DNA of 64,000 nucleotides from Ascidiella aspersa (lineage: Eukaryota). The position numbers and the translations under genes were made by a program. The stretch is taken from NCBI GenBank assembly GCA_963924565.1, contig OZ004612.1, positions 29,698,001 through 29,762,000 on the forward strand, read 5' to 3'. Of this stretch, positions 20,401 through 64,000 are shown piece after piece; the stretch's first letter is position 1, and each line of letters opens with the position of its first letter. A model generated the notes under the pieces. It had not been told where the DNA came from and made no database searches. It saw only the letters and a program-made list of their open reading frames with translations.

Positions 20401-20688
20401 GTTTATTTAGCGTTTGCGCTGCGGGCCTAATCCCTTTTTCCCCGCTAGAAAGCCCAACCCAATGCCAATCACTTCTCGAAACTGCAAAGCACTCATCACA
20501 TCGCGTGTAATCGAACCAGTGACCCTCTGATCGATTACAAGCACTCTCAAATCGACAAGATCCTGGCTTCTTTGATTTTCTCGGCCGGATTTAATTACGT
20601 TTCGTGTCGCAAAAACGCAACGAGGCGATACAAATAAGCACACACACACAAGAGCTCGCACCAATGAGCATCCAAAAATCCGAAAGCT

Positions 20689-21375
20689 CATACACAAATA
20701 AGTAGCATTCTGTAAACCATGCAAACAAGTTAGCATATTGGCTGGAGGTTGTAGTTAAACGTTTAATGAATATCAAAGCTCATACTGGAGTAGGTAGAAT
20801 TCATCGAACATTTCAAACAAAGATTAGTATATTGACTGGTGGTGGAGGTAAACGTACAATAAATATCAAATCCAATACAGAAGTACAGTAATAGCATGCT
20901 GTGGACGTTTCGAATAAATCTTAAAATAATGTCTGGAGGTTGAAATTAAACGTACAATTAATGTTAAAGCCCATACATAAATAAGTAGCATTCTGTAAAC
21001 CATGCAAACAAGTTAGCATATTGGCTGGAGGTTGTAGTTAAACGTTTAATGAATATCAAAGCTCATACTGGAGTAGGTAGAATTCATCGAACATTTCAAA
21101 CAAAGATTAGTATATTGACTGGTGGTGGAGGTAAACGTACAATAAATATCAAATCCAATACAGAAGTACAGTAATAGCATGCTGTGAACGTTTCGAATAA
21201 ATCTTAGCACATTGGCTGGAGGTTGTAATTAAACGTTTAATGAATTTTTCAGAAGTAGGAAGTATTTTGTAAACGTTTCGAATATAAAATTATTCATTTT
21301 CAACACGAAAATTCTGCCTTATTTTGTATAGGCTTTGATATGCTTTCCACGTCTAACTAAAACTCCAGCCATTAT
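20689..21375. repeat. Tandem array (285-bp direct duplication of ~90-100-bp subunits) derived from a dispersed foldback MITE family
   Basis: GCTGGAGGTTGTAGTTAAACGT..AATATCAAAGCCCATACAGAAGTAGGTAG units; other family copies at ~6410-6560, 22965-23085, 31640-31860, 34110-34230, 41445-41545, 41990-42085, 44875-45120. Confidence 0.88.
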
Positions 21376-22639: not shown

Positions 22640-25600
22640 CTGAAAAAATCACAAAAACATGTTGTTAATATCAAAAAATTATTATTGCTCAAAAGTAAAT
22701 GCTACATTCACCTTGCAAAACAACAAATCTTGAAAAAACGAATTTTTTTTCGTTATTAGGTATTATTATAAATAAAATTCAATTGAAATGAAAAACAAAA
22801 CAATAAAAACGAAAATAGATTTTTAAAAGTAATTTTGTAATCATTTTTGTTTTTGAATATGCCTAAATAGTTTATGGTGGTTCTTACAAGTTCCAAAAAG
22901 AAAGTCCTAATGGAATTAGAAAAAACAATTTTAAAATTAGAAAGAAGGAAAGAATCCACAATTTTATTCGACGTAGTAAGAATATCAAAGTCCATACACA
23001 AGTAGGTAGCATTTTAAAAACGTTCAAAATGCTACCTACTTTTGTATGGAGTGTGGTGTTGTTACTACAACCCCAAACCATTATGTTCCAAAAGTTTATT
23101 CGCCATTCTTGCTTTTAAAAAAAGCACATTCTTTAAACTAAGCATAAAAGGTTTTCCTTGGTTATTTCTTTAAAAATAGAGACCAGCAGATTAGGAATCA
23201 ATATTGAAAAACTCTTCGACCTTTTAGCTTTGACGGCAATCCAATAGCGTGGATTAAGATGTCATAAACTGTCTTAAAGGACATGCGGAAATAAATGGGC
23301 GTTTCGCTTTAAAAAAATCTCCCGTTAAAATTTGTTAAAAATCATCAGAACCTTGACTTATAGTGATTGTAGTAAGCTGAAAACACATCGGTTGTACAAA
23401 TGCTTATAATTCACATATTTCTAAAACTAAACATAGCTAAAAACCAGGAAAAAAGTTTAATTGGATTTTTTCCTCAATGATGTTTGCCTATAAATATTAT
23501 GTCCTAAACCTTTGATATTATTGAATACCCTCTGTTTTCATAAACCTATTAATAGTGTTGTAAAAGACATGAAACAGAAGGATATATCGATTTTTCCATT
23601 CTTCTCGCATTTGTATTATGTAACTTTTATTTATTTTACCTCTTTTATGCTTCCACCATTCCTCAGTGTTGTAATCACTTTGTAGATTGCATAGGCAGGG
23701 ATCATTCCAACAGAGCTAAGGCTCATCATATGCGCTATAACTTGGGCCCAGGGTGGGTAGGTTTTGCCGTCGTACTTTAGTGGGGAAACTCCGGCGAGAC
23801 TGTAGATTATAACCAGCTGAAAAACAATAGATTCTGTATGAGTGAAAAACAAATGCATTAATTTCTCATTTATTTTCATCAGTTTTACCATCGATGATAT
23901 TATTGTTGAAATCGTATACGTAATTGCGTTTAGTCAAGCTATTTCAATACGATTTTCAACAGGCCAGATTGTACACTATGACCAGCTGGAATACATTAGA
24001 TTCTCTTGTATGAGTGATACGAAAAGACATAATTCTCATTTATTTTTATATTTAGAATCGCTTCTCTAATTTTGTAATCGTATACGCGATGAACTTAAGT
24101 CGTTTAGTTGAACTGTTTTTGTAACACAGCGGTAATAAAAACCAACACGGATTGTCATGTAGTTTTAATTTATTTTACAATCCCTTTTTTCTTGTCCTTG
24201 GTACTTTTAGCTGCTTTAATCATTTATTCAGTAAAAGTTGCACAATTTTCAGTGAACATTTCACTTTTCGACTTTAACACTATAATAAGCTGATATTCAA
24301 CATATTTTTTTGTATAAAAATTAACCAAAAGTCGCCTATAGGCCCTCTAGTAATCTAGTGTGACTATATTTGTTGTTGTTTTTTTACTTCTTTACAACTT
24401 CCTATATATTCAACGTTGTCCAGCTTAAAAGATGTACAGCCAAACTATTTTAGATAACTCCGTCAATAGCGATTTTGACAAGATTTCTATTTCCCTGACC
24501 GGGAACCGAACCCCGTTCTGAGGTTTCATAGAGATTCTTGATTAATCACGACTTGCCCTCTGTAAATTTAAGCGTTACCTTGAACAGGTTACGTAAATGT
24601 GTATGATAGAAACTACTTCCAAGAATTTAAAAAATGTTAATTGTCAGTCTTACTTTTTGCATTTTATGAGCACTTCCTCTTTAAACTTGAGTATGCTAAC
24701 AGAAATCTTTATCATAATGTAACAAATTTTTATTGGGTATTTTCGTTTTGTATGCTGTGCCTGATTAACTGCACCTAAAACATGACTCGTAACCAAGCGC
24801 TTAGTTTTATACACTGTACTTTTGCGTTTAATGTTTATGCACAGTACGAAGTTAAATGCGATATATTTTCTGCCAACAAAATACTACTCTCCAACATAAC
24901 TTCTCATCCTAACAACCAAATTTTAAATTTAGTTTCTTCCTAACTAAATCAAAGGTGGCGTTTTTCATTTGCTTTTAAAGGATCGATTTGAATTGAACAC
25001 CCAAGGTGCGGTTAAGTGCAGCGAAATATATTTCTTTTTTAAGAACTTAATTAGATTGACGAACTTTAGATTTAAACCTTTTTTGTTCCGAGCACCTGAC
25101 TAGACTAATACAGCGACGGGCACAAGATAAAACTAAGTTCAAAGTGGACTTTTGATGTTGCACTGAATATGTGAATAATAGAAATCACCTTGACCCTTGC
25201 AAGAAAATGTCGACCTTAAATTCCTAGCTTTGCTAGAGTACTTTGCTGTGGACTTTAAATATTTAGGTTTAACAACACATTTATACTTACCACACAAATG
25301 GTCGGCGCAATAAACATCCACGAGAGCTTAATCCACAGTTTTCCTCGAATATCACCGATAGCGCTGGTCATGGCTTCCCAGTAACGATCAGCCCCGTAAA
25401 ACCAACCTATGGCCACAAACTCACAACACCCGATAAAGAACATGCACCAGCCAGCCACTGCGTAGTTGTTGAACATCTCGAAAACGTAAACACCGCCCTG
25501 CGTGAAGTAAAAATGTTATGCTGTCGTTTGCTGTATTTCTGTAGAAATCATATTGTAATTAAGGTTGGTTTTTGTTGCTGTATTTATGTGCCAATAGAAA

Positions 25601-28600
25601 CAAGGGTTTATTTGTAGATTGCTGTGTTTCTATACTAATCCTATTTAAATGTGGGTTGTTGTAGTTTCCTGTATTTTGATACAAATCGTATTTTGAGTGT
25701 CAGTTAAAGTAGGTTGCTGTACTTCTATACAAATCGTATTTTTAGTGTGGTTTGTTGTAGGTTACTGTATTTCTATGCAATTTATATTTGAGTGTGGGTT
25801 GTTGTATGTTGCTGTATTTCTATACAAATGTTATTTAAATTTGGGTTGTTGTAGGTTGCTGTATTTCCATACAAATCTTATTTTGGGTGTGGTTTGCTGT
25901 AATTGCTGAATTTCTATACAAATCATATTTTTAGTGTTGGTTGTTGTAAGTTGCTGTAGTTTTATACAAATCGTTTTAGAGTTAAGATTGAAGTAGGTTG
26001 CTGAATTTCTATGCTAATGGCAATTAGAGTTAAGAATAAACTTGGGTTGGCGTAGTTTTATGGATGTCAGGACTAGGGTTGTTTGTTTGTTTGCTGTATT
26101 TTTATTTTGGTACCTCTGTTAGCATTGGAAGACCCAGAATAAACATGAACACAGCGAAGATGGCTTGAAGCACTTCCCTGCAGTATTTGTGCTTGCGAAG
26201 GTTGGGGAAGTTGTCCAACATTGTTCCCACGAAACACTCTTGGTAGACGAACTAGAAAATACAATCGTTAGTAGGAAAAATGTCAAAATATCACCGATGA
26301 CTTTGTTTTTTAAATTCGACTTAAACTAGAGTCTAGGACTGCTTAATGTGTGTAAGTAAGTTTTTAAGTTGTCTGCGTATCTATAAAAGTCATTGATTAA
26401 TATAATAGGTAAGCTACAGAACAGGCTTTTATTTGAGATATTCAATAATTTCGCAACTTTGGCGCAGTAAGTTTTTGTAATGGTCCTGATTGGCATATTG
26501 GGGTGAATATTCTGTATTTTATTCACCATTTTAACAAATGAGGTCCTCTAAATATTATTTGAAAAAAAAAATGGTTCGTCAAGTTAAAAGTTTGATACCA
26601 ACTGTATTTGTGGTAGCTTTCTAATGTTACCTAAAAACGCATTTTAGTAGAAGTACAAAATACAAACCTGTGAATCAAAGCCGAGTGACATCAGGGTGAG
26701 GAAGAATATAACGCACCAGAACTGCGGCAGTGGAAGTAATGAGAGAGTTTCAGGGTAAACTATGAAGGCCAAACCGGGACCAGATTGCGCCACCTTATCC
26801 ACAGTTGTGTTCTACAATAAAAATATGTTCTAATAATAAACGTCAAAGCGAATAGGTTAAGTTAATCGAAACCCTCTTGTTAAAAGCGTTTCGATACGCA
26901 CTTGTATCATCTTTAGTTCATGTAACTGAAAACGCTTATAAAAGGTGGGACGCAATTCTAATCATGCTGCGTTTGTAATCAAGCATTAATTAGCACTTCC
27001 ATGTGTTGAACAGGTACAACGTTGTTGACACATCAACGTTGACTTAAGATATGAATTATTTTTCATGCTGTCCTTAGATACATATAAACGCAGTCTTCAC
27101 TTTGTAATCCCTATGAATTAACAGCAAGTTGTAATTAAAAACCTGACTGTTTTAATCAAAAGTGTGTAGATTTTTACTAATAACAGCAGTTACCTGATAC
27201 TTGGCCATAAAGCCCAGGGTTGAAAACACCGCAAATCCGCTTGTGAAGCTCGTTATTGAGTTTAAGGCGCCGATGAATATTGAATTCCTGTTGGGAAAGT
27301 GAACATGTCATTTTCTTACATTTCAACACAAAACTTCGGTACACTATGCACGGATCTGTAATGTAGCTTTGAAATGAATGTCAAAGTCAAATAAGTCTAC
27401 TAAATCAGCATGATATTAATAAAGCCGCCTTGTATCATCATAAATGTTCTACTCGACCTATTTTTCTGTTGGTAAAAAACATGTATTGCGAAATTACACG
27501 ATAAAATATTGTTTAATGCTTCTGAAGCATCAGTGGGAAGCGCAAGATCGTTTTGAATTTTAACCAGATTTATTGTGTTTCACGATACAACGTCGTATAT
27601 ATCTTGCAAATTGCGCCAATTGTTTGTTAAGTGATGCTTTTGATTCCAGCCCAGTACACATCTATGCGCCGAAATACCGTTTTTGTCTTTAACTTCTAAA
27701 CACCAACCTCCAAAAGTTGTGCTTGATGTCGTTGTAGCTTCCCAGCACGACCAAAATACCGAAGCTCACAGCATAAGAGAAGAACACTTGAGAACCGGCG
27801 CTGACCCAAACCTAAAAAGCGCCATATTACTTTTAATAGTTGGTCAAATGAAGTATACCCATTTTTTTTTGTCCTTTGATAAGCAGTCGGCTTCCCTTTT
27901 TTCCAACTTTATAATTTAAATAGGATGTAATTACATAGTATATAAACTTAAACCCTTAAATTACAAATTGGTCGATATACATTTATTTACAATTGAGGGT
28001 ATTTTGGGGGCGCTCTTTTAAAGGCGTTTCAAAATAAATAGTGTTAAATTAATCACCAATATACTGTCGAACAACCCTAGCCGTATAATGGTTATAGATT
28101 ATAGTATACACATTCAAAAAACGCAATTCATTAAATTACTACCAATACATGAAAATCTCATAGCTTTTATATATCTCGTCGAATAGTACTCGAAATAGTA
28201 CTGTTAAAGACAAACGCATTGTTAGATACGCGCCGCACAACCTCGCCTATTTAAAGAACTTGATTTGTCTTTTAACGATGCCTTTTATTTGGAATAGAGC
28301 ATATTAAGCATAAAACAACGAAAACGAGTGTTACGATATTGTTAATTAAATAGGCGATATTAAGCTCCTAAACTTCTGGGTTACTGAGCTCTATAGTGTT
28401 GTAAGATACGCTACGGCTATGCACAACCTTGCCTATTGCAAGAATTTAATTTTTCCTTTACCGATGTTTGACAGAGTAAATACTGTATTTTATGAAACTA
28501 AATTGGAGAGAGTAAAATAGCTATTTGAGAGAGTAAATACTAAGCTTTCAAACAACGTTTAACAACTCAGTAATGGTATTAGGCTAGTTGTTCTCCTTAC

Positions 28601-38789: not shown

Positions 38790-41335
38790 TTACGTGTGAT
38801 GGCGTGGCTATCCATTATGCGCGACTACTACTAACGCTACGATAAAGCCTCTATTTTCCAAGAGACCGTTAATTTTAACAGCGCCAGCTTTGGATCTTTC
38901 TGGTAACCAGTGGTAAATAAACAAACATCCATGGAAAAAGTATAATCGGTTATATTCGCGTTTTTCTACAACCTAAAGGCTTTGAACATTGTAGACTTTC
39001 TACAGTTCACTGTTCTTTCGTTATAGTTTGGTTGCTGAACAATACCATTTTCTTGGACACCTACCACAACCATTAGGCACGACCACTATAACGCCAGTTA
39101 AAGCCGTTATTCCCTAGAGACAGTTAATTTTAACCACGCCAGCTTCGGCTCCTTAAACCGTAAATAAAACAAGCAAACATCGAAAAATTATTATCCGATT
39201 ATATTAACATTTTTCCACAACCTAAATGGTTTAAAAACTGTACACTTTCTACGTTTAACCGTTTTTTTTTATTATATCTTTGTTACTAAACATTAGCTGA
39301 CAATTCTCGGACGGCTATACGACAGCGACTAGGCACAACTACTACTAACGCTACGATAAAGCCTCTATATTAACTTCTTTTCTACAACTTAAATGGTTTA
39401 AAAAATGTACACTTTCACAACTTAACCCGTTATCTGTTATAGCTTGGGTAGTCAACTGTAGTCGACCATTGTTGGACAAATATACCACAGCGACTAGGCA
39501 CAACTACTACTAACGCTACGATAAAGCCTCTATTCCCAAGAGAGCATTTTTTTAACCAGGCCAGCTTTTGTTTCTGATCACCGACCGTAAATAAACAAGC
39601 CAACTAAATAGACGTTGTTTTGTTATAGCTTGGGTACTCAACTGTAGTTGACAATCCCCGGACAGCTATACCACAGCGACTAAGCACAACTACTACTAAC
39701 GCTACGATAAAGCCTCTATATTAACTTCTTTTCTACAACTTAAATGGTTTAAAAAATGTACACTTTCACAACTTAACCCGTTATCTGTTATAGCTTAGGT
39801 AGTCAACTGTAGTCGACCATTGTTGGACAACTATACCACAGCGACTAGGCACAACTACTACTAACGCTACGATAAAGCCTCTATTCCCAAGAGAGCATTT
39901 TTTTAACCGAGGCCAGCTTTTGTTTCTGATCACCGACCGTAAATAAACAAGCCAACTAAATAGACGTTGTTTTGTTATAGCTTGGGTACTCAACTGTAGT
40001 TGACAATTCCCGGACAGCCATACCACAGCGACTAAGCACAACTACTACTAACGCTACGATAAAGCCTCTATATTAACTTTAAAAAAAAAAAAAAAACTGT
40101 ACACTTTCACAACTTAACCTTTACCTGTTATAGCTTGGGTACTCAACTGTAGTCGACCATTGTTGGACATCTATACCACGGAGATTAGGCACAACTACTA
40201 CTAACGCTACGATAAAGCCTCTATTCCCAAGAGAGCATTTTAACCGAGGCCAGCTTTTGCTCCTGATCAACGACCGTAAATAAACAAGCCAACTAAATAG
40301 ACGTTGTTTTGTTATAGCTTGGGTACTCAAATGTAGTCGACCATTGTTGGACACCTAACCACAACCATCAGGCACAACTACTACTAACGCTACGATAAAG
40401 CCTCTATATTAACTTTTTTTCTACAACTTAAATGGTTTAAAAAACTGTACACTTTCACAACTTAACCCTTTATCTGTTATAGCTTGGGTCCTCAACTGTA
40501 GTCGACCATTGTTGGACACCTATACCACAGCGACTAGGCACAACTACTACTAACGCTACGATAAAGCCGTTATTCCCAAGAGACCATTTTAACCGAGGCC
40601 AGCTTTTGCTCCTGATCACCGACCGCAAAGAAACAAGCCAACTAAATAGACGTTGTTCTGTTATAGTTTGGGTACTCAACTGTAGTTGACAATTCCCGGA
40701 CAGCCATACCACAGCGACTAGGCACAACTACTACTAACGCTACGATAAAGCCGTTATTCCCAAGAGACCATTTTAACCGAGGCCAGCTTTTGCTCCTGAT
40801 CACCGACCGCAAAGAAACAAGCCAACTAAATAGAAGTTGTCTGTTATAGTTTGGGTACTCAACTGTAGTTGACAATTCCCGGACAGCCATACCACAGCGA
40901 CTAAGCACAACTACTACTAACGCTACGATAAAGCCTCTATATTAACTTTTTTTCTACAACTTAAATGGTTGGAAAAAATTTACACTTTCACAACTTAACC
41001 CTTTATCTGTTATAGCTTGGGTCCTCAACTGTAGTCGACCATTGTTGGACGGCTATACCACAGCGACTAAGCACAACTACTACTAACGCTACGATAAAGC
41101 CTCTATTCCCAAGAGACCATTTTAACCAGGCCAGCTTTTGCTCCTGATCAACGACCTTAAATAAACAAAGCCCCTCAAATGGACTAAAAAACTGTACAAA
41201 TTTACTAAACAATAGTCAACCACATTCTTGGACTACTATACCACAATTGTTAGGCGCTACCACTACTAACGCTTCTATGATAAGCCTCTATTCCCAAGAG
41301 ACCATTAATTTTAACCAGGCCAGTTTTTGCTCCTT
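38790..41335. repeat. Complex satellite with two alternating monomer types (~165 and ~185 bp), upstream of SLC6 coding exon 1
   Basis: ~14 copies of the core CCACAGCGACTARGCACAACTACTACTAACGCTACGATAAAGCC. Confidence 0.95.
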
Positions 41336-43723: not shown

Positions 43724-45169
43724 CTCTATACTCTAGCAAATCTACATAAATCACACTTTGTAGGTTGTCCTGGCCCAGTTCTGTCATTTATACAAAGTAC
43801 AATATGCTAAACAGGAAGCTGTCGACCTCTGAGATGACTAGGTTAACTGGCCTATGGTGACATATGATGTCTCACTGGCGACTTGGCAAAACAAACGCTG
43901 TTGCTGCTTGGAAAAGCATATAAGCGCTTGTTAACGGACGTGACTATATAATGCAGCAGTATAAACACACTTGGAACTTCTAATTGGACGGGCACGCTCG
44001 CTCCATTCCCCAGCTGCCACTGCGACACTCACTTGGATTCGACGAAAATGCCCCTTGGCTAGAAACAAATGTGGTTCTAAATGAGAAAAAAATGAAGAAG
44101 GCCGCGTTTGATGTGGCTTTGTAAGCTGACAACACTAAATCGATCGCTCCGCGTAATCTGCATATGAAAGAAAGCGAGTGAAAGTTGTATCGCATATCTA
44201 CTTGAAAAGAAACCTGAAAAGTTGTATGCATATCTACTTGCGCTGTTTTCGGATCAAATTATCTCATATTTTTCTAGAAGAAATATTTAATATTTTATTT
44301 TTCGTTGTAACCTGAATTCCTTATACCTTCAGGGTCAACTGACTTGATAACCATTTTGTGGTTCTTCGTTGATCCTTTGCTACTGTGTTCGGATTTTTAG
44401 CGACAAATGAACAGTTATCCTATATCACAGTCAAAAGTTTATTTGTCGTAGCATTTAACTGTGTTACGCGGTTTAAAATTAACCAAAGAATGCTTGCGCA
44501 TTTATTTGTTACTTGTAAGTCGTTTAAACCCTTGAAATTGCACGCCACATGTCAATTATTCTTAAACCATTTCCTAGAGGCAATAAAAGTTACTAAGATA
44601 TTGAACATAGTTTTTGCTAGTGGTTATCAAACTTTTCCAGGTTGCGGCGCACTAACAAACCGATAAACAAATTCCCGGCGAACTTCAATCGCAAGAAAAC
44701 AATTTAATATTTTATTCTTCTTGTCATATTTAGATCATTCGCATCATTACAACGGTGGTAATTTGTCAAAAGTTGCGAACTATTTTTTGCGAGGTTTAAA
44801 ATCACTGATCGAAACACAGAATAAACCCAACGAACACCCAAATTAATTTATAACATAGGTGTTTATAACATACAAAATACAACCTCCTGCTGTGTGACCT
44901 TTGATATTCATTTTACGTCCAACTACAACCTCCAGCCATTATATTAAGATTTGTTCTAAAGTTCAAAATGTTAACTACTTCTTGGTTGGCTTGACATTCA
45001 CCCTGCATGTAACTACAACCTTCAGCCATTATGTTAAGATATATTCAATACCTTCATATCATGCCAGCTTTTCTGTATGGGCGTTGATGCCGATTCCACG
45101 TCAACCTTCAGCCATTATGCTGCTATTTTTTAATCTGTAAAATCACTTTATTAAATATTATTTTTTAAG

Positions 45170-45680
45170 TTCAAGTTCGGCTGTACTTGGCTGCTACACA
45201 AAAACCCAACAGTGTTTGTTGAGGAAGGGTAAAATGTAGTTTAAGACTATCCGGGCGAAATATTAAGTTCTTCTTTGTCACATTCAAGTTCATGTTTGGC
45301 TGTGCTCGGCTGCTCCACAAAAACCCCACAGCTTTTTTTTAGCGAGGAGCAAATATATTCTATGACTATCCGGACGAAATATTAAGTTCTTCTTTGTCAC
45401 ATTCAAGTTCAGCTGTGCTTGGCTGCTACACCAAAACCCCACAGCTTTTTTTAGCGAGGAGCAAATATATTCTAGGACTATCCGGGCGAAATATTAAGTT
45501 CCCCTTTGTCACAGTCAGGTTCCAGTTCAGCTGTGCTTGGCTGCTACACCAAAACCCCACAGCTTTTTTTAGCGAGGAGCAAATATATTCTAGGACTATC
45601 CGGGCGAAATATTAAGTTCTTCTTTGTCACATTCAAGTTCAAGTTTGGCTGTGCTCGGCTGCTACACAAAAACCCCACAG
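45170..45680. repeat. Tandem repeat, ~4 copies of a ~110-125-bp unit
   Basis: GCTGTGCTTGGCTGCTACACCAAAACCCCACAGC..GACTATCCGGGCGAAATATTAAGTTC repeated. Confidence 0.93.
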
Positions 45681-46561
45681 CGTTCCACCAGAAGGCGAAC
45701 TCGTTAGCTCGTTAATTAAACAAAGTCCCAAAGTTGAATGAGGAACTGAAATACTCTGCTATAGTGGCTTATATTAACTGCCTTTTTGCAACTATTATAT
45801 TGAATCGTCATATATATAAGGTGAAACATTATAATATTTTGAATAAATCCAATTTGCGAAACTGCTGACGTTTCTGTGTGTTTTTAATGAGAACAAATAA
45901 GGTATGACTAAAAATACTTCATATTATTAGTTTTTGTTTTTAGGAAACGTTTAATTAGAGATGACGTCACAAAGTTACATCTAAACGTGACGTCATAAAA
46001 CGTAACCTTAACAACAACACAGTTTGTTTATTTTAATAAAGTTTTGAGTTGGAGAGGTGTTTAATACAAAAGCTATATTATAAACATGTCAATATGTTAT
46101 CGATTCGCGCAAAGCTAAGAAACGCCTTTGTATCATTAAGCTGCCAATGCTTTCCGTTATATGGTGCGATAAGACGCATGACGCCTTTGTTAAGACATGG
46201 TAGAAATGAAATTCAATTGTGTTTGTAGTTAGTTACGTTGTTATAATAGGCAAAATGCATTTTTCGTGAGGAAATGGCCTCGTGGCCCGTAAGAAACGCG
46301 GCTCTTTGCAATTAACCAAGTAAAAATGCGACTTTTTGCGGTTAACGAAGTGAGAAATGTGGCTCTTTGAAATGCAATTAAATTTTGTAGTTACGTTGTT
46401 ATAATACGCAACAAATGCAGTTTTGTTGAAATGACCTCGTGGCCCGCACCTGGCTTTCATAAGTTTGCCTCGTTCAACGCGTAATACAAAGCTCTGTAAC
46501 AAAACACTTGAATTACGCTAAACGTGGTCATCCAATTACGTCATAAACTGGTACATTCGTA

Positions 46562-55826: not shown

Positions 55827-56327
55827 CGGCATTTATGGCCGGAGAATTTCTAATGATAACTTAGTATCGGACCGGCACCTATATTAACACTCGCTTTCGA
55901 TCTGATAATTTCGGACTTCCCAAATTTTGAGCAGATATTTTATTTTCTGTTACTTTTGAAAGTTTTGCATATATGGGAGTCCATTGACCAGGAGTTAAGT
56001 TTCCTTGACGGCAAAACCAAATTTTACAAGTGTGATATTTTTATTTCTACTCGAATTGAGAGTGTCCATTTTTGGATACAAACGAAAAACTCACCATAAA
56101 ACAAAACAGAAATGTAAATACCTTACAAAAAGCTAGTAATACAAACAGACTTTATAAACGTGATTTATTTTACTTCTTCTCAAACTGTGTGTCCGTTTTG
56201 GGAATACAAACGAAAAACACCATACAAATCAAAAAGAAATATAAATGCAAAAGCTAGCAATACAGACAGACTGTAAAACCATAATAAAAGCCAGTGGGAT
56301 TATTTCAAACAGCTGATGGTGATTTAT

Positions 56328-56487
56328 TCACGCTTTTGAGTTTTCTGTTTGTGTTTCGTCATTATCGGCCAACAGCGATGCTCTTGTGACGTAAGAAACG
56401 ACTGGCTTGTTGGTGACGACACTGGGCTGACGCGAAAACGCGAAATCCATCGTTGGATCCTTTTGCATCGATATGAACGCTTGGATT
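56328..56487 (-). CDS. Terminal exon 'tail C' (IQAFISMQKDPTMDFAFSRQPSVVTNKPVVSYVTRASLLADNDETQTENSKA*); phase-compatible with the TM exon at 57242-57375 (97-aa product)
   Basis: attttacag| phase-2 acceptor, GC-richer coding-like composition, TGA overlapping AATAAA. Confidence 0.62.
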
Positions 56488-56561
56488 CTGTAAAATATTT
56501 TAGGATTAATGATTAAATAAAAGGTTGAGAGACACATTATTTAAACTAAATCAGTGGTAGT

Positions 56562-56782
56562 CAGGGACGCCGGAGAGGGGGGGCGCGGGGGGGGCGGGGG
56601 CAAGCGCCCCTCCTGCCCTTTGCTAAGGGGGCAAATCTAGAGGGCGTGGCCGCAAAAATTTTTCCGAGGGAGCACCCCCCGACACCCTAATATTTCGGCT
56701 CGCTACGCTCGCATGCGGTCTATGTTGCCCTTACCAAAAAAGTCTCACCCCCCCTTGCCCTGAAATCGCTTCGGCGTCCCTG
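56562..56782. mobile_element. GC-rich hAT-type MITE (221 bp) in the intron between TM exon 2 and tail C
   Basis: Perfect 11-bp TIR CAGGGACGCCG; perfect TSD GTGGTAGT. Confidence 0.92.
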
Positions 56783-57241
56783 GTGGTAGTCAGCCCAAAG
56801 TTTTGGGGTATATCTCCTTTGATATGAAAACCTACTTTTATACTTACTACTTATATGTAACGAGTTTTCGCGACCAAGTGTTTGTCTGTCACCACATTGG
56901 GTTTTAGCTTACTTGTGGCTGGGTTGGTATTTTTAGTTTTTACTCGAAATTAGAAGACAGTTGAAAACCTTTGACTATAACAAGAGATTGGTTTAGTTAG
57001 CAGGTCACCAAATTATACAATGATCCGGCCCGCAGAAATAATTTAACTGGCATATTCCTTTAATGAAGTTAAACTCATTAATAACCTCAACAACATAATA
57101 TATACTTAGTTCATAGTTATATATACGTCAATTGAAATAGTTCTACACTTGGATTTTTTGCGTTTGTGGGAACCTTACCAAAGCAAACAAACAGTTTTTA
57201 CTTGTTACCTACTGTTGGTTGCAATTTACTTTTTCTCTTAC

Positions 57242-57375
57242 CTCATTTTTGCTATGTCTTTTCTTATTTTGCACAAACACATTACAGATAGGATGGAAAG
57301 AATCAGCGACAATACCCCACAACAAATTAAACTGGAAATCTGCCATAATTCCATCACACCTGTATAATTCTGCAT
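57242..57375 (-). CDS. Putative first coding exon of a small single-pass membrane protein, copy 2 (MQNYTGVMELWQISSLICCGVLSLILSILSVMCLCKIRKDIAKM-)
   Basis: Same 134-nt length and frame as copy 1; phase-2 donor AG|GTAAGA. Confidence 0.75.
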
Positions 57376-57422
57376 GTTCTAATGAAACTTTAATGGCTAC
57401 TAAATGATACTCCCAAAACGGT

Positions 57423-57458
57423 ACTGAATAGTTTCGCGATTAGACTCTTTTTTTTATA
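57423..57458 (-). promoter_or_regulatory. Core promoter (TATAAAAA plus TCAGT initiator) of TM-exon copy 2
   Basis: Same geometry as copy 1: TATA at 57458, Inr A+1 at 57425, ATG at 57375. Confidence 0.5.
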
Positions 57459-58120
57459 TCGCCTACTGCGGCTGGCGCGCTAAGGAATATAACTAGCTTA
57501 GTTAGGCTATTTGCATATTTATTATTTCCTTAATAGACTTGTTGACGCAAATCTATTTAAGGGCGTTCCGAGAAAGCTTTAAACGGACGATATTGTTCTG
57601 TATTTATCTATTTGTTAAAAATGGAAACTGTGGTCTTATCGAACTGATCTGTTTGATGTCTAGTCCTCTTACTTGTATATTCATATTAAAAACTTCATGT
57701 CACAACTCGATACATTTTTATTATTTACATTAAAAAAATGGCCACATACATGTAAAGTTTTTTATACTAATTGATTATTCGTCTATAACAAAATGCTTTT
57801 CATTTCATTCTAATTTCATCTCGGTTTTCGTGAAACATTTAACGAAGAGAAATTCAACTTTATATTTCCTAAAACAAGTTTTGCTCGTGGACAATAATCA
57901 CAAATTCGAAAAAAACGATGAAAATGTCTTGCGCACAGTGTAATGAATAATGATGGAAGATGTGGGTATATTTAGGCCAATAAAACACTAGGTAACAATG
58001 TAAACCATTTTGTTAGCCACAAATGGGTTATTATTCTTTTGGAAAAAACAGCTGTTTGATTAAAAGAGTAATGACTAATTCTTCTAGTGGAAGGTCTATC
58101 GTGATACAAAAACAACAATT

Positions 58121-58523
58121 TTACGTTATATCATCTTGAGTTTGGTTTACACAGTTAATATCCATGTTGTAAATCACGTTTTTCACCGTTTCACATTCAC
58201 CCGAACTCTCTGCGTTTTCCATTTGAAATATTTTCCCATCTGAACCTTCTTTAGCCACAGAAAGACTGGCTGTGCAGATCGAAGCTGTTTTCTCTGTAAT
58301 ATCGCCAACAAAGCTCTCTTCAATGGTGGCGTAAGTCGGCGCTTCTACGTCATCGTGCGATTGTGAATTGGTGTCGATTACAAGTGCAGCGTCTTGTTTG
58401 TTTACTTTATCATCGTAGCGCGTGGGTGTTTCTCGTGCCATCGAGTATACAACTGTACCTGCTTGATCAGCAATGCTGTTGCTATCTTTGACTTGTACAC
58501 ACGCTGTTTTATGCAATAAGCTC
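58121..58523 (-). CDS. Terminal exon tail A-prime (paralog of 61974-62376); phase-compatible with the TM exon at 60998-61131 (178-aa product)
   Basis: ttattacag| phase-2 acceptor; open frame of 133 codons; both synonymous and non-synonymous differences from the other copy. Confidence 0.72.
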
Positions 58524-60284
58524 CTGTAATAACAATATATATATAAGAAGGCGTACCTTTAATCTAAAACCATTGGCATTCGGTTTCTGCTTGTCGATCA
58601 CTGTTCCGCGTATATCACCAATAAAACTTAAAGTTTAAAACCCAGGTAAACCAAAATTATCCATTTTAAAAAAAATATATTTTTCGTATATACTGGCAAT
58701 AAATATTTCTTGAAAAAAAAAATATATATATATTTCGCTTATAATAGCATTATATATGTATGGAGAATATATGTATACATATTTTGCCAATAATGGCATC
58801 GTCAGCTCCTTAACGCTCCTTAACGTGTCAATAATAAAAGACTGCCGGAATTACTTTCAAAAATAGTCTCCTTTGAACCCTAACTGAAAAATGTCGCATT
58901 GTTTTTATACCTTTAATAGCCTAATATCCTTCAACGTGTCAAAAGTGCCACTAATACACAACAAAATGCGATACTTGGCAAATCGTTTAACCCTAATACA
59001 CACAAAAACAAGTTACATACACTTTGTACAAGCAGGGCCGGGTTAACATAGTGGCAGATGTGGCAGCTGCTACGGGCCCCGCGCTTGGTGAGCAAACATT
59101 GTGTTTTTGGCAAAAAAATGTCGAACATATGGAAGTTGGTAAGAAATTTTTGGCTGACAAACTGGAATGGCGTGGGATAATATTATAGTTGTAACTTGTA
59201 AGTTTAAATTACTAGTCCCAAAATATATTGATAAACAAAATGCACAATAAACATATATAAAAAATGCTAGAAACAATTAGTTACATTCCGAGCCGTTTTA
59301 CCAAACTATACAACGGGTGTGCAATTTTTCCTAAATGCTTGCTTAAAAGTCATGCACGAGCAACGATGTGTTAGACTAGCGGTTTTTCAGAAATGTTTGT
59401 GAGAGAACTAGCCTCTCAATTATTTGGTGACTTGTGTGCTCCGTCTGATCAACAAATCATTTTTGCGAAGCGCAAAACACACAAAAACTTAGCCAAGTTA
59501 TGTCACCCATGTAATTTTGGTAGGCCTACTTGAAAAATATATTTTTGGTTTAAAACACTAAACATTAAATAACGCAATAAAGTTCGTTTGGATTGGATTT
59601 TCTGGTCCATCTATAGATAGATTATATCAAAAAAACAAGGCAACAAAGTACTGTTGACGTTTTTTATACATTTAGACGTATCTAAACCATTACGATTAAG
59701 TGACAATATTGGCCTAAATTAAACGAATACCACCATGTAAAGGCAACTATATTCTGCACAGGAAGCACAGCCCTTAACATGCGTACTGTACAACCAATAT
59801 ATAATCCAAATAAGTCATGCTAAATGTCGCCATTGCTACTTTGGCAATACAAAGTTTTTCGAAATATCTTAAAATCCGCTTGGACCAAGAATTGGACCTT
59901 TTTTGGAGGAATTTAGTAGAAAAACTATTGAGGCAAATAATTTTTTTTAATGATAGATTATAACTAGAAACGTATGGCTTCATTTGCTACGGTATAATAT
60001 GCAAATTTAAGACTGTTTTCAGTTACAACGAGTGTAGGTGAAAAAATGAATATAACGTTAAAGCAACATACGCATATCTGAAATGAATATAAATGCAAGT
60101 TCAAACATCAGCAAGTATAAAAAAGTCATTAAACAAAGTATTTTCTCGGTCGGGTACAACAGCAAAAAATAGAATATATTTTAGAATGTAAAACAAAAAG
60201 GTGTTTTACGCGCCGTGAGATATAATTTAAAATCATAATTGCCTTATTCATTTTTCCTGCCAGCCTCTAAAAGTTTAAAAACCC

Positions 60285-60620
60285 TAAGTTTTGTGCGTCG
60301 TAAAATGTTGTCTCGTTATGGTTCGGCACCTGCACTTCGCTATGGACAGATGTTGTGCGCAGGTTTGGGCTTTGGAGACGGCTTTTTTCACGCATCGTTT
60401 AGGCCCGCCGAATGTTGTCTCGTTTCTCCTCGCTGTTTGAAAAGAAATACCTCGACTATTTTCGTAGCTTTCGTAATTACTGCTGAAGTCTGAATGTCCT
60501 GCCCTCGTGACTTTCCTGGATGTTTGTCGAAAGTAATGCAGGTTCCTCTTCTTCCGCTAACTCAACGATATCTTCGGTCGAACCCGTGACATCAGCGGAT
60601 GAGCGATGTCCTCGAGGTCT
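60285..60620 (-). other. Candidate exon or pseudo-exon 'tail B' downstream of TM exon copy 1
   Basis: GC-richer island after a tgccatag| acceptor. The phase-2 frame reads DLEDIAHPLMSRVRPKISLS* and then stays open ~90 more codons. The frame is ambiguous. Confidence 0.35.
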
Positions 60621-60997
60621 CTATGGCACAAATTATTTTTCAAGTATTATAATGACATAAACCTAGTATGGGAGTGATGTATTCTGTAAAATGGTTTAAA
60701 ACTCTTAAATACAATGGTCATGCAATCAAAATCATTGGTTGCCAAACTTGATTTTGGGGGAATTTTTTGGAGTGATATACAATACAATACATCATTATAG
60801 TCGTTAAGTTAATTTAAACAACATAATACTAGTTTGATGTCTTTGTAAAACATATTTGTGCTGTATTATTTTATTTAATACTGGCCCAAGGCTACTATAT
60901 AGTCATATATAGGTCAATTGGGATTAGTTTTTACTTGTTACCTACTGTTGGTTTTAATTTTGAATACAAAAGTTAATTGCAATTTTTTATTGCTTAC

Positions 60998-61131
60998 CTC
61001 ATTTTTCCTCTGTCTTTTCTTATTTTGCATAAACATAATGCCGAGAGAATGTAAAGAATCAGCGACAATATCCCACAACAAATTAAACTGGAAATCTGCC
61101 ATAATTCCATCACACCTGTATAATTCTGCAT
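60998..61131 (-). CDS. Putative first coding exon of a small single-pass membrane protein, copy 1 (MQNYTGVMELWQISSLICCGILSLILYILSALCLCKIRKDRGKM-)
   Basis: ATG in AAC-ATG context after an in-frame TAG; ~22-aa hydrophobic run, CLC then KIRK; strong phase-2 donor AG|GTAAGC. The frame is conserved without indels in the paralogous copy, with synonymous third-position changes. Confidence 0.75.
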
Positions 61132-61178
61132 GTTCTAATGAAACTTTAATGGCTACTAAATAATACTCCCAAAACGCT

Positions 61179-61214
61179 ACTGAATAGTTTCGCGATAAGA
61201 CTCTTTCTTTTATA
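61179..61214 (-). promoter_or_regulatory. Core promoter (TATAAAAG plus TCAGT initiator) of TM-exon copy 1
   Basis: TATAAAAG at 61214-61207; Inr A+1 at 61181 (33 nt spacing); 50-nt ATG-free leader to the ATG at 61131. Confidence 0.5.
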
Positions 61215-61973
61215 TCGCCTACTGCGGCTGGCGCGGTAAGGAATATAACTAGCTTAGTTAGGCTATTTGCATATTTATTATTTCCTTAATAGACTTGTTG
61301 ACGCAAAGCTATTTAAGGGCGTTCCGAGGAAGCTTTGAACGGACGACACTGTTCTGTATTTATCTGTTTATTGAAAAAGGGAAATGCAGTCTTATCGAAC
61401 TGATCTGTTTGATGTCTAGCCTTCTTACTTACATGTATAATATAAATTTGAGTTGAACTGTTTGACGTTTCCAGTTGAGGTACGGATGTGGTTCAAGGAT
61501 TTTTTCGGAATCCGGTTCAGTTCCTGTGACGTTCGTAGCCATTTAATAGTTTCGGTTCGGGCTAGGTTTGACTCACTGTTTTTTTATTCCATACACTATT
61601 TTTAGCTCGATTTTCGTAAAATATACAATTCAACGCTATATTTTCCAAAACAAGTTTTGCTCGTGGGTGGTATATGGCATTTTTGTATTTGATTCAATTA
61701 AAAGAAATAGAGTAATGATCTAAAACAATTAGACAATAATCAGAAATTGGAAAAGTACGATGAAAATCTCCTGCCTATAGTGTAATGATGAAAAATATTA
61801 AATACATTTAGGTCAATAAAATATTAGGTAACAATGTAAACCATTTTCTCGACCACATACAGGTAATTATTCTATCGGGGAATATAAGAATGTCTCCTTA
61901 CTTAAAATAGTATAATGAGTATAATGCATACTTGTTCTAGTGGAAGGTCTGTCGTTATTCAATAACGGCTATT

Positions 61974-62376
61974 TTAAGTTACATCATCTTCAGTTGCATT
62001 CACACAGTTAATATCCATGTTGTAAATCACGTTTGTCACTGTTTCGCATTCACCCGAACTCTCTGCGTTTTCCATTTGCAATATTTTCCCATCTGAACCT
62101 TCTTTAGTCACAGAAAGACTGGCTGTGCACATCGAAACTGTTTCCTCTGTAATATCACCAACAAAGCTCTCTTCAATGGTGGCGTAAGTCGGCGCTTCTA
62201 CGTCATCGTGCGATTGTGAATTGGTGTCGATTACAAGTACAGCCTCTTGTTTGTTTACTTTATCAACGTAGCGCGTGGGTGTTTCTCGTGCCATCGAGTA
62301 TACAGCTGTACCTGCTTGATCAGCAATGCTGTTGCTATCTTTGACTTGTACACACGCTGTTTTATGCAATAAGCTC
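61974..62376 (-). CDS. Terminal exon 'tail A': acidic, probably disordered cytoplasmic tail with Tyr motifs (AVYSMA, TRYVD, PTYATI, VIYNMD); its upstream exon is probably outside the window
   Basis: ttattacag| phase-2 acceptor, 403-nt open frame; frame conserved without indels versus the copy at 58121-58523. Confidence 0.72.
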
Positions 62377-64000
62377 CTGTAATAACAATATATATATAAG
62401 AAGGCGTACCTTTAATCTAAAACCATTGGCATTCGGTTTCTGCTTGTCGACTGTTCCGCGAATATCACCAATAAAACTTAAAGTTTAAAACCCAAGTAAA
62501 CCAAAATTATCCATTTGTTTAACTATATTCTTCGTATATACTGGCAATATATATTTCTTGAAAATAAAAATATATATTTCGCTTATAATAGCATTATATA
62601 TGTCTGGAGAATATATGTATACATATTTTGCCAATACTGGCATCGTCAGCTCCTTAACTCGGAATTTTAAACTTTGAGTTTGTTGTCTGCAATAACAACA
62701 AAAGTTTAAGTATTTAGTTTAGGAGATACTATTTACCCGGCTAACAAAGTACTTTTGATCGTTGTTTAATCACAATTAGAGAAACGCTCACGGAAAACAA
62801 AGTAATTTGAAATATTTAGGGAATACAGCATGCCAATAATAAAGAACTGCCGGAATTACTTTCAAAAATAGTCTCTTTGAACCCTAACTGAAAAATGTCG
62901 TATTGTTTTTATACCTTTAATAGCCTGTCGCAACACGTCAGCACATCAAATTAATTCTTTGTTTTATCGCCTTAATGTTGCGTCATGAAAGTTTTTGTTT
63001 AAATTCCATTGCCGATATCTCTTGCTAGAGTTTGCAACGAATGCCTTGTTACACCAATTTTTATGCGTCAGAGCTGTATGTGATGTGACGTATATCCGTT
63101 TAATGTGAGCGCTTTGTTTTGAAATTCGCCTTATTGTCAACAATCCATTATTTTTAGAATCGAACGCCAGTTACGTCGCAATGTAGATCGAAGCGCTTTT
63201 GTTCAAGCCATATTGGGACAAAAATATTATTTCCGTCTATAAGAGTCGAGAGAAAAAGGTTTAGACCACGCCTTGTTATCACGTGATACTTTGTTAAGTA
63301 TTATAAGAATTAATGACGTAAATCTTTCTTTATCGCAGAAATTTTCTTAACTGATTCTCGTCTATAAATAGCGTGTTCAATCAATATAAACCAGAGAGAG
63401 AGAGATAGGGGCTTTTATAGCTACTACTCAGACAGCAAACTCGAGTGCTTTTGTGACTGAACCAGTATCACCCAGTACTGCCTAGTGCAGAGGAGGCTTT
63501 TACAGCTTTTACTAAGACAGCAAAATTGACTGTTCATGTATCTGAACTAAAGGAAAGAATTGGACCTGAATGGCCTCACGAAGACAGGCCATCTCAAATC
63601 TTGTAGGAGTGTGGTCGATTCATCTTGGCAATTATATAAATGAAGACTCATTAACGGACCCAAAACCCCCACAATTGATGCCCGCGAGTGAGGAACGAAC
63701 CACCTGCAAACTACTTTCCCAAGAAGACTGAAGAAACGAAGCTGAAGTAAAATTTGGACCTCAAATCGAACAAATACTTTGCAATCGACGACGCGGACCA
63801 CTTGCAAACTGCTTTCCCAAGAAGCCGGACGACGAACTCTATTTTCCCGCATATATCTTATGGACAAGAAAAGATGTGCCTTCCAGCTACAAGCGACCGC
63901 CTAAAAACTGTCATGTTTGGAACTTGCAAGAAGCCAGCTTTAGAAGAAAATAATCTCAACGAAAGATACGTGAAGAGACGCTCCATAGCGTCAGCAAAGC

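What the first reader, a model, noticed from the sequence alone, without database searches (positions are those of the whole stretch)
56328..62376. Hidden tandem cluster of small TRAP-like (LAT/PAG/LIME-type) membrane proteins built from a TM exon plus interchangeable phase-2 tail exons
Seen: two 134-nt minus-strand exons (61131-60998 and 57375-57242), both too short for the ORF track. Each follows a TATA box, an Inr and a 50-nt leader. Each encodes MQNYTG (N-glycosylation sequon, no signal peptide), a ~22-aa hydrophobic helix and CLCKIRK, then ends at an AG|GTAAG phase-2 donor. The candidate downstream exons (62376, 60620, 58523, 56487) can all be read from a phase-2 acceptor, so either TM exon could join any downstream tail in frame. 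Tail A/A-prime is acidic and low-complexity with conserved Tyr motifs (VYSM, TYATI, IYNM). Established: a short ectodomain, TM helix, juxtamembrane palmitoylatable cysteines and a disordered Tyr-motif tail define vertebrate transmembrane adaptor proteins (LAT, LAT2/NTAL, PAG1, LIME1), which diverge too fast to be found easily by homology. Inference: this is an invertebrate, locally expanding family of signalling adaptors or immune/allorecognition co-receptors.
Basis: partly seen in the sequence, partly recalled or inferred. Interest (0 to 1): 0.88.

Follow-up and report, generated by a model that had tools for sequence, protein, structure and literature searches.

The report
Headless copies of a sea-squirt receptor tail
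A sea-squirt chromosome carries a young tandem array in which a promoter plus a tiny membrane-anchor exon is repeatedly placed in front of the tail exon of a neighbouring receptor gene, predicting small adaptor-like membrane proteins; no RNA data could be obtained to show that they are made.

Summary
The sequence features are real. Both 134-nt minus-strand exons exist, each with a TATA box, an Inr, a 50-nt leader and an AG|GTAAG phase-2 donor.

The array is larger than described. It runs about 23 kb past the window's end and holds five membrane-anchor (TM) exon copies, four full tail copies and one partial tail copy.

- **Tail origin:** the acidic tail exon is the last exon of a type I receptor gene ("gene 0") lying just upstream of the array. 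The small genes would therefore be "headless" chimeras, made when a 3-4 kb unit spanning a gene boundary was duplicated in tandem.
- **Tail status:** the tail keeps its frame, with no indels in any copy although the flanks have many.
- **Exon 60620:** this is a decaying relic of the last exon of a chromosome-3 gene. The phase-2 join reads it out of its native frame.
- **Exon 56487:** this is open in all three frames, so its phase-2 reading proves nothing.
- **Homology:** none to LAT, PAG or any other protein. The tyrosines do not fit the classic SH2 motifs.

A first-stage note on other DNA of this genome (s1-790982) raised a similar "headless adaptor" idea.

Verdict: real structure, plausible but unproven adaptor-like genes, moderate interest.

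The parts
61974..62376 (-). Tail A: phase-2 terminal exon (134 codons plus stop). Its nearest upstream TM exon lies outside the window at C6:29766350-29766483.
   Evidence: acceptor ttattacag|G; open only in phase 2; 95% identical to tail A'.
61583..61588 (-). AATAAA about 385 nt after the tail A stop (candidate poly(A) signal; gene boundary).
61207..61214 (-). TATAAAAG, 33 nt upstream of the Inr-like TCAGT (A at 61181). It lies in the best-conserved stretch of the repeat unit.
60998..61181 (-). TM1 first exon: 50-nt leader plus 134-nt coding part (ATG at 61131), donor ATGAG|GTAAGC in phase 2.
60280..60620 (-). Exon X1: relic of the terminal exon of a chromosome-3 gene. Phase 2 via the first AG gives 21 out-of-frame codons. 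The native frame is broken here by a 1-nt and a 13-nt deletion.
58121..58523 (-). Tail A': phase-2 terminal exon and candidate partner of TM1 (2475-nt intron).
57717..57722 (-). AATAAA about 400 nt after the tail A' stop.
57451..57458 (-). TATAAAAA upstream of the Inr-like TCAGT (A at 57425).
57242..57425 (-). TM2 first exon: 50-nt leader plus 134-nt coding part (ATG at 57375), donor ATGAG|GTAAGA in phase 2. This is the last unit of the array.
56323..56487 (-). Exon Y: acceptor ttttacag|A, 53 codons in phase 2, TGA overlapped by AATAAA (56328-56323). It is an orphan and is open in all three frames.

Best explanation
A lineage-specific tandem array was made by repeated duplication of a 3.1-3.8 kb unit that spans a gene boundary.

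Each unit holds three parts:
- (A) the 3' part of an intron, the cytoplasmic-tail exon and the 3' UTR of a type I receptor gene;
- (B) a TATA/Inr promoter and a first exon encoding a 12-residue N-terminus, one TM helix and a basic stop-transfer stretch;
- (C) a relic exon X.

Because the B exon ends in phase 2, and the tail exon is read only from phase 2, each B exon can splice to the next tail exon downstream. The predicted product is about 178 aa: a signal-peptide-less, N-out/C-in single-pass protein. In effect it is a 'headless' version of the neighbouring receptor, with the architecture of a transmembrane adaptor.

**Shown:** the duplication structure, the in-frame receptor gene, phase compatibility, frame maintenance of the tail, and decay of X.

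**Inferred:** transcription from the B promoter, TM-to-tail splicing, membrane topology, and any tyrosine-phosphorylation signalling or competition with the parent receptor.
For: **Array.** There are 5 TM exon copies and 4 full plus 1 partial tail copies on one strand of C6:29754.3-29776.7 kb.

**Parent receptor.** The gene 0 exons are 40, 195, 231 and 136 nt, with consensus splice sites, and they enter the most upstream tail copy in phase 2.

**Tail exon.**
- It has 0 indel events in 403 columns, against 14 events in 692 flanking columns for four copies.
- For the three headless copies alone the counts are 0 against 12. A rough Poisson estimate gives P about 0.005 once microsatellite indels are left out.
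- Tail exons have GC 0.42, against 0.28-0.29 in introns and UTRs.
- They are two of the three longest ORFs in 64 kb.

**Gene boundary.** AATAAA lies about 385-400 nt after each tail stop, and a TATA box follows about 370 nt (tail A) or 260 nt (tail A') later.

**Promoter.** The region from -250 to +90 around the putative start is the best-kept part of the unit: 95-98% identity against 75-88% in the stretch between the tail stop and the promoter.

**Start and splice signals.** The ATG has an A at -3, and the donor AG|GTAAG is kept in all five copies.

**Contrast with X.** In the same units, X has picked up frameshifting deletions while the tail has not.
Against:
- No homolog of the tail, of X or of Y exists in 5.8 billion or 1.84 billion protein sets, so there is no cross-species support.
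- pN/pS among tail copies is 0.5-1, with no third-position excess.
- Gene conversion from the functional gene 0 tail could keep the other copies intact.
- One unit has lost its promoter and ATG, and one tail is truncated, so some units are certainly dead.
- The nearest acceptor after the TM donor is X (378 nt away), not the tail (2.5 kb away).
- The TM-like ORF is short and T-rich, so it could arise by chance.
Confidence: 0.45

Rival explanations
1. Duplication debris. Only gene 0 (the full receptor) is functional. The downstream units are untranscribed or non-productive pseudogene copies, young enough to look intact.
For: - Copies are 88-97% identical.
- pN/pS is near 0.5-1.
- P(no stop in 32 substitutions) is 0.26 by chance.
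- One unit lacks its promoter and ATG, one tail is truncated, and X is decaying.
- There are no homologs anywhere.
Against: - The three headless tails have no indels although the flanks have 12 events.
- The promoter-proximal region is conserved above the surrounding sequence.
- ATG, donor and acceptor are intact in four units.
Confidence: 0.28
2. The real gene is a micro-protein. The TM exon is spliced to the nearest acceptor (X, or Y for the last unit), giving a 65-97-aa single-pass protein. The receptor tail copies are unspliced passengers.
For: - X lies 378 nt after the donor, with a reasonable acceptor.
- The 21-codon phase-2 reading and its TAG are kept in all four X copies, and both indels lie after that stop.
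- The stop of Y is overlapped by AATAAA.
Against: - The phase-2 reading of X is out of the exon's native, selected frame.
- There is no AATAAA or ATTAAA within about 600 nt after X.
- Y is open in all frames, so its ORF carries no weight.
- This reading does not explain the frame maintenance of the tails.
Confidence: 0.12
3. Alternative 3' cassettes of the receptor. The last ectodomain exon of gene 0 (phase-1 donor) splices into the internal tacag| acceptor (61115 or 57359, phase 1). This would give type I receptor isoforms with alternative TM segments and tails.
For: - The phases match.
- All elements lie on the same strand, downstream of gene 0.
Against: - The internal acceptor is purine-rich (5 of 11 pyrimidines at -5 to -15) and has a competing AG 10 nt upstream (sequence).
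- Gene 0's own TM exon, tail and poly(A) signal come first.
- Poly(A) signals and TATA boxes lie between the cassettes.
- The distances are 17-21 kb for the window's two copies.
Confidence: 0.08

Closest known systems
Vertebrate raft-type transmembrane adaptors (LAT, LAT2/NTAL, PAG1/Cbp, LIME1)
   Same: The predicted layout matches: no signal peptide, an ectodomain of about 12 residues, one N-terminal TM helix, cysteines at the cytosolic end of the helix, and a domain-less acidic tail with several tyrosines. PMC3492796 describes Cbp as having an N-terminal TM domain and two palmitoylation sites just after it.
   Different: - There is no sequence similarity.
- The cysteine motif is CxC, not CxxC.
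- No YxN or YxxM motifs are present, and no Csk-type motif was recognised.
- The tail is shared with a neighbouring full receptor.
- Expression, palmitoylation and phosphorylation are untested.
SIT1 / TRIM (non-raft transmembrane adaptors)
   Same: A short ectodomain that carries an N-glycosylation sequon (SIT1, from my own knowledge), a single TM helix and a tyrosine-bearing tail.
   Different: - There is no homology.
- There is no extracellular cysteine for dimerisation.
- One copy has lost the sequon (N-Y-P).
- The sequon lies about 10 residues from the helix, which is marginal for glycosylation.
Truncated ('headless') paralogs of receptors created by partial tandem duplication or exon shuffling
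   Same: The duplication unit joins the tail exon of one gene to the promoter and first exon of the next. The same tail exon is used by a full receptor and stands behind ectodomain-less first exons.
   Different: - The new 5' exon has no detectable relative: not the receptor's own TM exon (p=0.26) and nothing elsewhere in the genome.
- Each unit also carries a fragment copied from a chromosome-3 gene.

Membership tests
Transmembrane adaptor proteins (LAT/LAT2/PAG1/LIME1 type) | No signal peptide, a very short ectodomain and a single TM helix near the N-terminus | tested here: met
   The TM exon translation has a 12-residue N-terminus, a Kyte-Doolittle 19-residue maximum of 2.66-2.70 at residues 16-34, and +5/-1 charges after the helix. 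This is a prediction from the exon only.
Transmembrane adaptor proteins (LAT/LAT2/PAG1/LIME1 type) | Juxtamembrane CxxC palmitoylation motif | tested here: inconclusive
   C-L-C-K lies at the cytosolic end of the helix (CxC, not CxxC) and is kept in all five copies. Palmitoylation itself is not testable here.
Transmembrane adaptor proteins (LAT/LAT2/PAG1/LIME1 type) | Tail with several tyrosines in SH2-binding consensus motifs (YxN, YxxM, YxxI/L/V) | tested here: inconclusive
   There are four tyrosines, three of them invariant: V-Y-S-M-A, T-Y-A-T-I and I-Y-N-M-D. Only Y-A-T-I fits YxxI. None fits YxN or YxxM.
Transmembrane adaptor proteins (LAT/LAT2/PAG1/LIME1 type) | Sequence homology to a known member | tested here: not met
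   - Pfam: no family at E<=1.
- No hit in 5.8 billion clusters or 1.84 billion representatives.
- The Atlas search gave no usable hit.
Transmembrane adaptor proteins (LAT/LAT2/PAG1/LIME1 type) | Domain-less, disordered cytoplasmic tail | tested here: inconclusive
   AlphaFold2 gave a mean pLDDT of 36.7 with a 4-row alignment. The charge-hydropathy value sits on the boundary. There are no Pfam domains.
Transmembrane adaptor proteins (LAT/LAT2/PAG1/LIME1 type) | An mRNA that joins the TM exon to the tail; tyrosine phosphorylation and SH2 recruitment | not testable with these tools
The biochemistry is outside these tools.
Local type I receptor family (gene 0 and neighbours on C6) | Shares the cytoplasmic-tail exon | tested here: met
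   The gene 0 tail copy (L013:4282-4680) is 86% identical to tail A'. The homology includes 636 nt of the intron upstream.
Local type I receptor family (gene 0 and neighbours on C6) | Signal-peptide and ectodomain exons upstream of the TM exon | tested here: not met
   Only 750-850 nt lie between each tail stop and the next TM exon, and this stretch holds a poly(A) signal and a TATA box but no exon-like ORF. The ectodomain exon has no copy inside the array.

The most novel reading that the evidence does not exclude
A tunicate lineage has built its own transmembrane-adaptor-like proteins within the last few percent of sequence divergence. A novel promoter and membrane-anchor exon captured the signalling-tail exon of the receptor next door, through tandem duplication across a gene boundary. 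The headless proteins would then act as signalling partners or competitors of that receptor. This would be a caught-in-the-act example of how adaptors like LAT or NTAL could arise from receptors.
Probability: 0.2. Interest if true: 0.7.

Novelty: new variant of a known kind. Interest (0 to 1): 0.45.

Why it matters
Transmembrane adaptors are regarded as vertebrate immune-cell inventions of unknown origin, because they evolve too fast for homology searches. I found no paper in the held library describing one in an ascidian.

If these genes are expressed, the locus shows a concrete birth route. A first exon encoding only a membrane anchor gains, by tandem duplication, a neighbouring receptor's tail exon in the right phase. 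The parent receptor is still present beside it for comparison.

If they are not expressed, the locus is an ordinary young segmental duplication in a fast-evolving receptor cluster.

Tried and rejected

**Joined product.** All searches were done exon by exon.

**Homology searches, all negative:**
- tail in the search for homologous proteins, the search of protein representatives, Pfam and the Atlas;
- X4 in the search for homologous proteins;
- tail A' against a neighbouring receptor's tail, E=0.2.

**Origin of the promoter/TM segment:**
- no DNA similarity to the upstream receptor genes;
- no DNA similarity anywhere else in the genome;
- similarity of the TM exon to gene 0's TM exon is not significant once TM composition is kept (p=0.26).

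**Selection tests.** pN/pS among paralogs is uninformative. Paralog footprinting is only weakly informative because the copies are young.

- One search used the wrong locus coordinates and searched the intron upstream of the tail. That stretch carries stops in the other copies.
- One search used Y one base out of frame; the search was repeated correctly.
- One search was a frame error.
- One search was a word-count error.

**Rejected ideas:**
- Y is not a retrocopy source. The homology to C4 runs past the expected poly(A) site, and the C4 copy has a stop.
- The structure of the next receptor gene upstream could not be resolved by eye.
Full report
**Setting.** The window is G000:C6:29698001-29762000 of a 308.6-Mb assembly. 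Earlier follow-ups of this scan call the genome a sea squirt, and it uses spliced-leader trans-splicing. I did not verify the species.

**1. Observation**

Their first 44 nt are identical, and no match is expected by chance.

Each exon encodes 44 residues: a 12-residue N-terminus with an N-x-T sequon, a hydrophobic core (Kyte-Doolittle maximum 2.66-2.70), then C-L-C-K-I-R-K. Each ends at ATGAG|GTAAG in phase 2.

A TATA box lies 33 nt before an Inr-like TCAGT, and the leader is 50 nt.

The two tail exons (62376-61974 and 58523-58121) are 403 nt and 95% identical. They follow a ttattacag|G acceptor and are open only in the phase-2 frame. They are two of the three ORFs of 110 aa or more in the whole window.

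**2. The array is larger and has a parent gene**

Searching the whole genome shows five copies of the TM exon, four full tail copies and one 82-nt remnant. All lie on the minus strand of C6:29754.3-29776.7 kb and nowhere else.

One TM copy lacks its promoter, its ATG and its first 47 nt.

In window-style coordinates, the order along the minus strand is:

- tail (78681)
- truncated TM (77629)
- X3
- tail (75576)
- TM (74330)
- X2
- tail remnant (69214)
- TM (68483)
- X4
- tail A (62376)
- TM1
- X1
- tail A'
- TM2
- Y

Units are 88-97% identical.

Upstream of the first tail I found an ordinary type I receptor gene, which I call gene 0:

| Exon | Length | Splice detail |
|---|---|---|
| Signal peptide | 40 nt | phase-1 donor |
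| Ectodomain 1 | 195 nt | phase 1 in, phase 1 out |
| Ectodomain 2 | 231 nt | phase 1 in, phase 1 out |
| TM | 136 nt | donor TACAG\|GTAGGA in phase 2 |

All four exons have consensus splice sites, and the model enters the first tail copy in frame.

So the "tail A" exon is the cytoplasmic tail of a receptor. That receptor belongs to a weakly similar family scattered over C6 at 28.5-30.4 Mb. Further receptor genes with tyrosine-rich tails lie upstream.

Between each tail stop and the next TM exon there are only 750-850 nt. This stretch holds an AATAAA about 385-400 nt after the stop, then the TATA box, and no ectodomain exon.

The repeat unit therefore spans a gene boundary, as another first-stage note on this stretch also said.

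**3. What exon X (60620) is**

X has four copies, each about 380 nt after a TM exon.

Its native reading frame starts at its first base. This is shown by a paralog on chromosome 3 (C3:19061227), where it is the last exon of a gene with a TM segment and a long tail, and is entered in phase 0.

DNA homology to that locus (about 77%) runs from 14 nt before the X acceptor to the end of the unit. Each unit therefore carries a copied 3' end of that gene.

Over the first 60 codons dN/dS is 0.24. Two 18-residue blocks show seven synonymous changes and no replacement changes.

Only X4, which lies outside the window, keeps the 116-codon frame. X1-X3 share a 13-nt deletion, and X1 has a further 1-nt deletion.

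Joined to the TM exon through the first AG, X gives 21 out-of-frame codons. Only the disfavoured second AG, 2 nt further on, would restore the native frame.

X is thus a decaying relic, not a designed alternative tail.

**4. What exon Y (56487) is**

Y is unique apart from a broken 158-nt fragment on C4. It is open for 41-53 codons in all three frames, so "readable in phase 2" carries no weight.

In its favour, it has a good acceptor, a GC content of 0.47, and a TGA overlapped by AATAAA.

**5. Are the headless units functional?**

Evidence for:

- The tail exon has no indel in any copy. The aligned flanks have 14 events in 692 columns for four copies, and 12 events for the three headless copies. 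A rough estimate gives P about 0.005.
- In the same units X has acquired frameshifts.
- The stretch from about -250 to +90 around the putative start is the best-conserved part of the unit.
- ATG, donor and acceptor are intact in four units.

Evidence against:

- pN/pS is 0.5-1 and there is no third-position excess.
- The lack of stops is unremarkable (P=0.26).
- Gene conversion from gene 0 could keep the tails intact.
- Two units are visibly damaged.
- Nothing homologous exists in any protein collection.
- AlphaFold2 gives no confident fold for the tail (pLDDT 36.7). This fits disorder but does not prove it.

**6. Comparison with known adaptors**

The predicted 178-aa product would have the layout of LAT, NTAL, PAG or LIME. 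PMC3492796 gives the Cbp layout.

Membership fails on homology. It is inconclusive on the palmitoylation motif (CxC rather than CxxC) and on the SH2 motifs (only one YxxI, no YxN or YxxM).

I found no paper on such adaptors in ascidians.

**7. Verdict**

| Reading | Probability |
|---|---|
| Headless chimeric genes, at least some expressed as TM+tail proteins | 0.45 |
| Duplication debris | 0.28 |
| Micro-protein ending in X or Y | 0.12 |
| Alternative 3' cassettes of gene 0 | 0.08 |

A signalling-adaptor function is an analogy, at roughly 0.2.

Noticed in passing
window 62926-63674, continuing outside the window to C6:29764900 (L012): A 3974-bp non-autonomous LTR retrotransposon sits in the intron between X4 and tail A. 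Its 749-nt LTRs differ at 1 position, its ends are TG...CA, and it has a 4-bp target duplication (AGCC). A purine tract lies before the 3' LTR, and there is no long ORF inside. The insertion is very recent.
   Followed up: partly
window 56562-56782: A 221-bp GC-rich MITE-like element with 11-nt inverted ends (CAGGGACGCCG) and an 8-bp target duplication (ACTACCAC), which is hAT-like. It lies in the intron between TM2 and exon Y.
   Followed up: partly
L013:5548-8155 (C6:29777548-29780155, minus strand): Gene 0 is an unannotatable orphan type I receptor with signal-peptide, two phase 1-1 ectodomain exons and a TM exon. It has no Pfam match, and weak paralogs are scattered on C6 and C1.
   Followed up: partly
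L031 / L037 (C3:19060893-19062700, minus strand): A chromosome-3 gene has one large exon encoding a TM helix plus a long tyrosine-bearing tail, then a 27-nt microexon, then a terminal exon that is the source or paralog of exon X.
   Followed up: partly
L014:3706-4065 and L014:9403-9945 (minus strand): The tails of neighbouring receptor genes are built from repeated tyrosine motifs: E-P-Y-S-L-A three times, and about eight repeats of a unit of about 20 residues containing G-Y-I-T-P-N-N.
   Followed up: no
window 39264-41235; 45158-45701; 25521-26025; 20683-21248; 763-1269: There are several non-coding tandem arrays: a compound 165+186-nt period with at least 11 copies; a 118-nt period with 5 copies; a 47-nt period; a 283-nt unit repeated twice; and a 146-nt period. 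The first lies in a stretch of strong negative GC skew (38-44 kb).
   Followed up: no
window 61279-61272 and 57523-57516 (minus strand): An ATGCAAAT octamer lies about 95 nt upstream of the putative start and is kept in all four intact promoter copies.
   Followed up: no
window 61070-61040 (minus strand): In TM1, about nine substitutions are clustered within 30 nt of the helix-coding part, while its promoter differs from the sister copy at only about 2%. This could be a micro-conversion patch or local selection.
   Followed up: no
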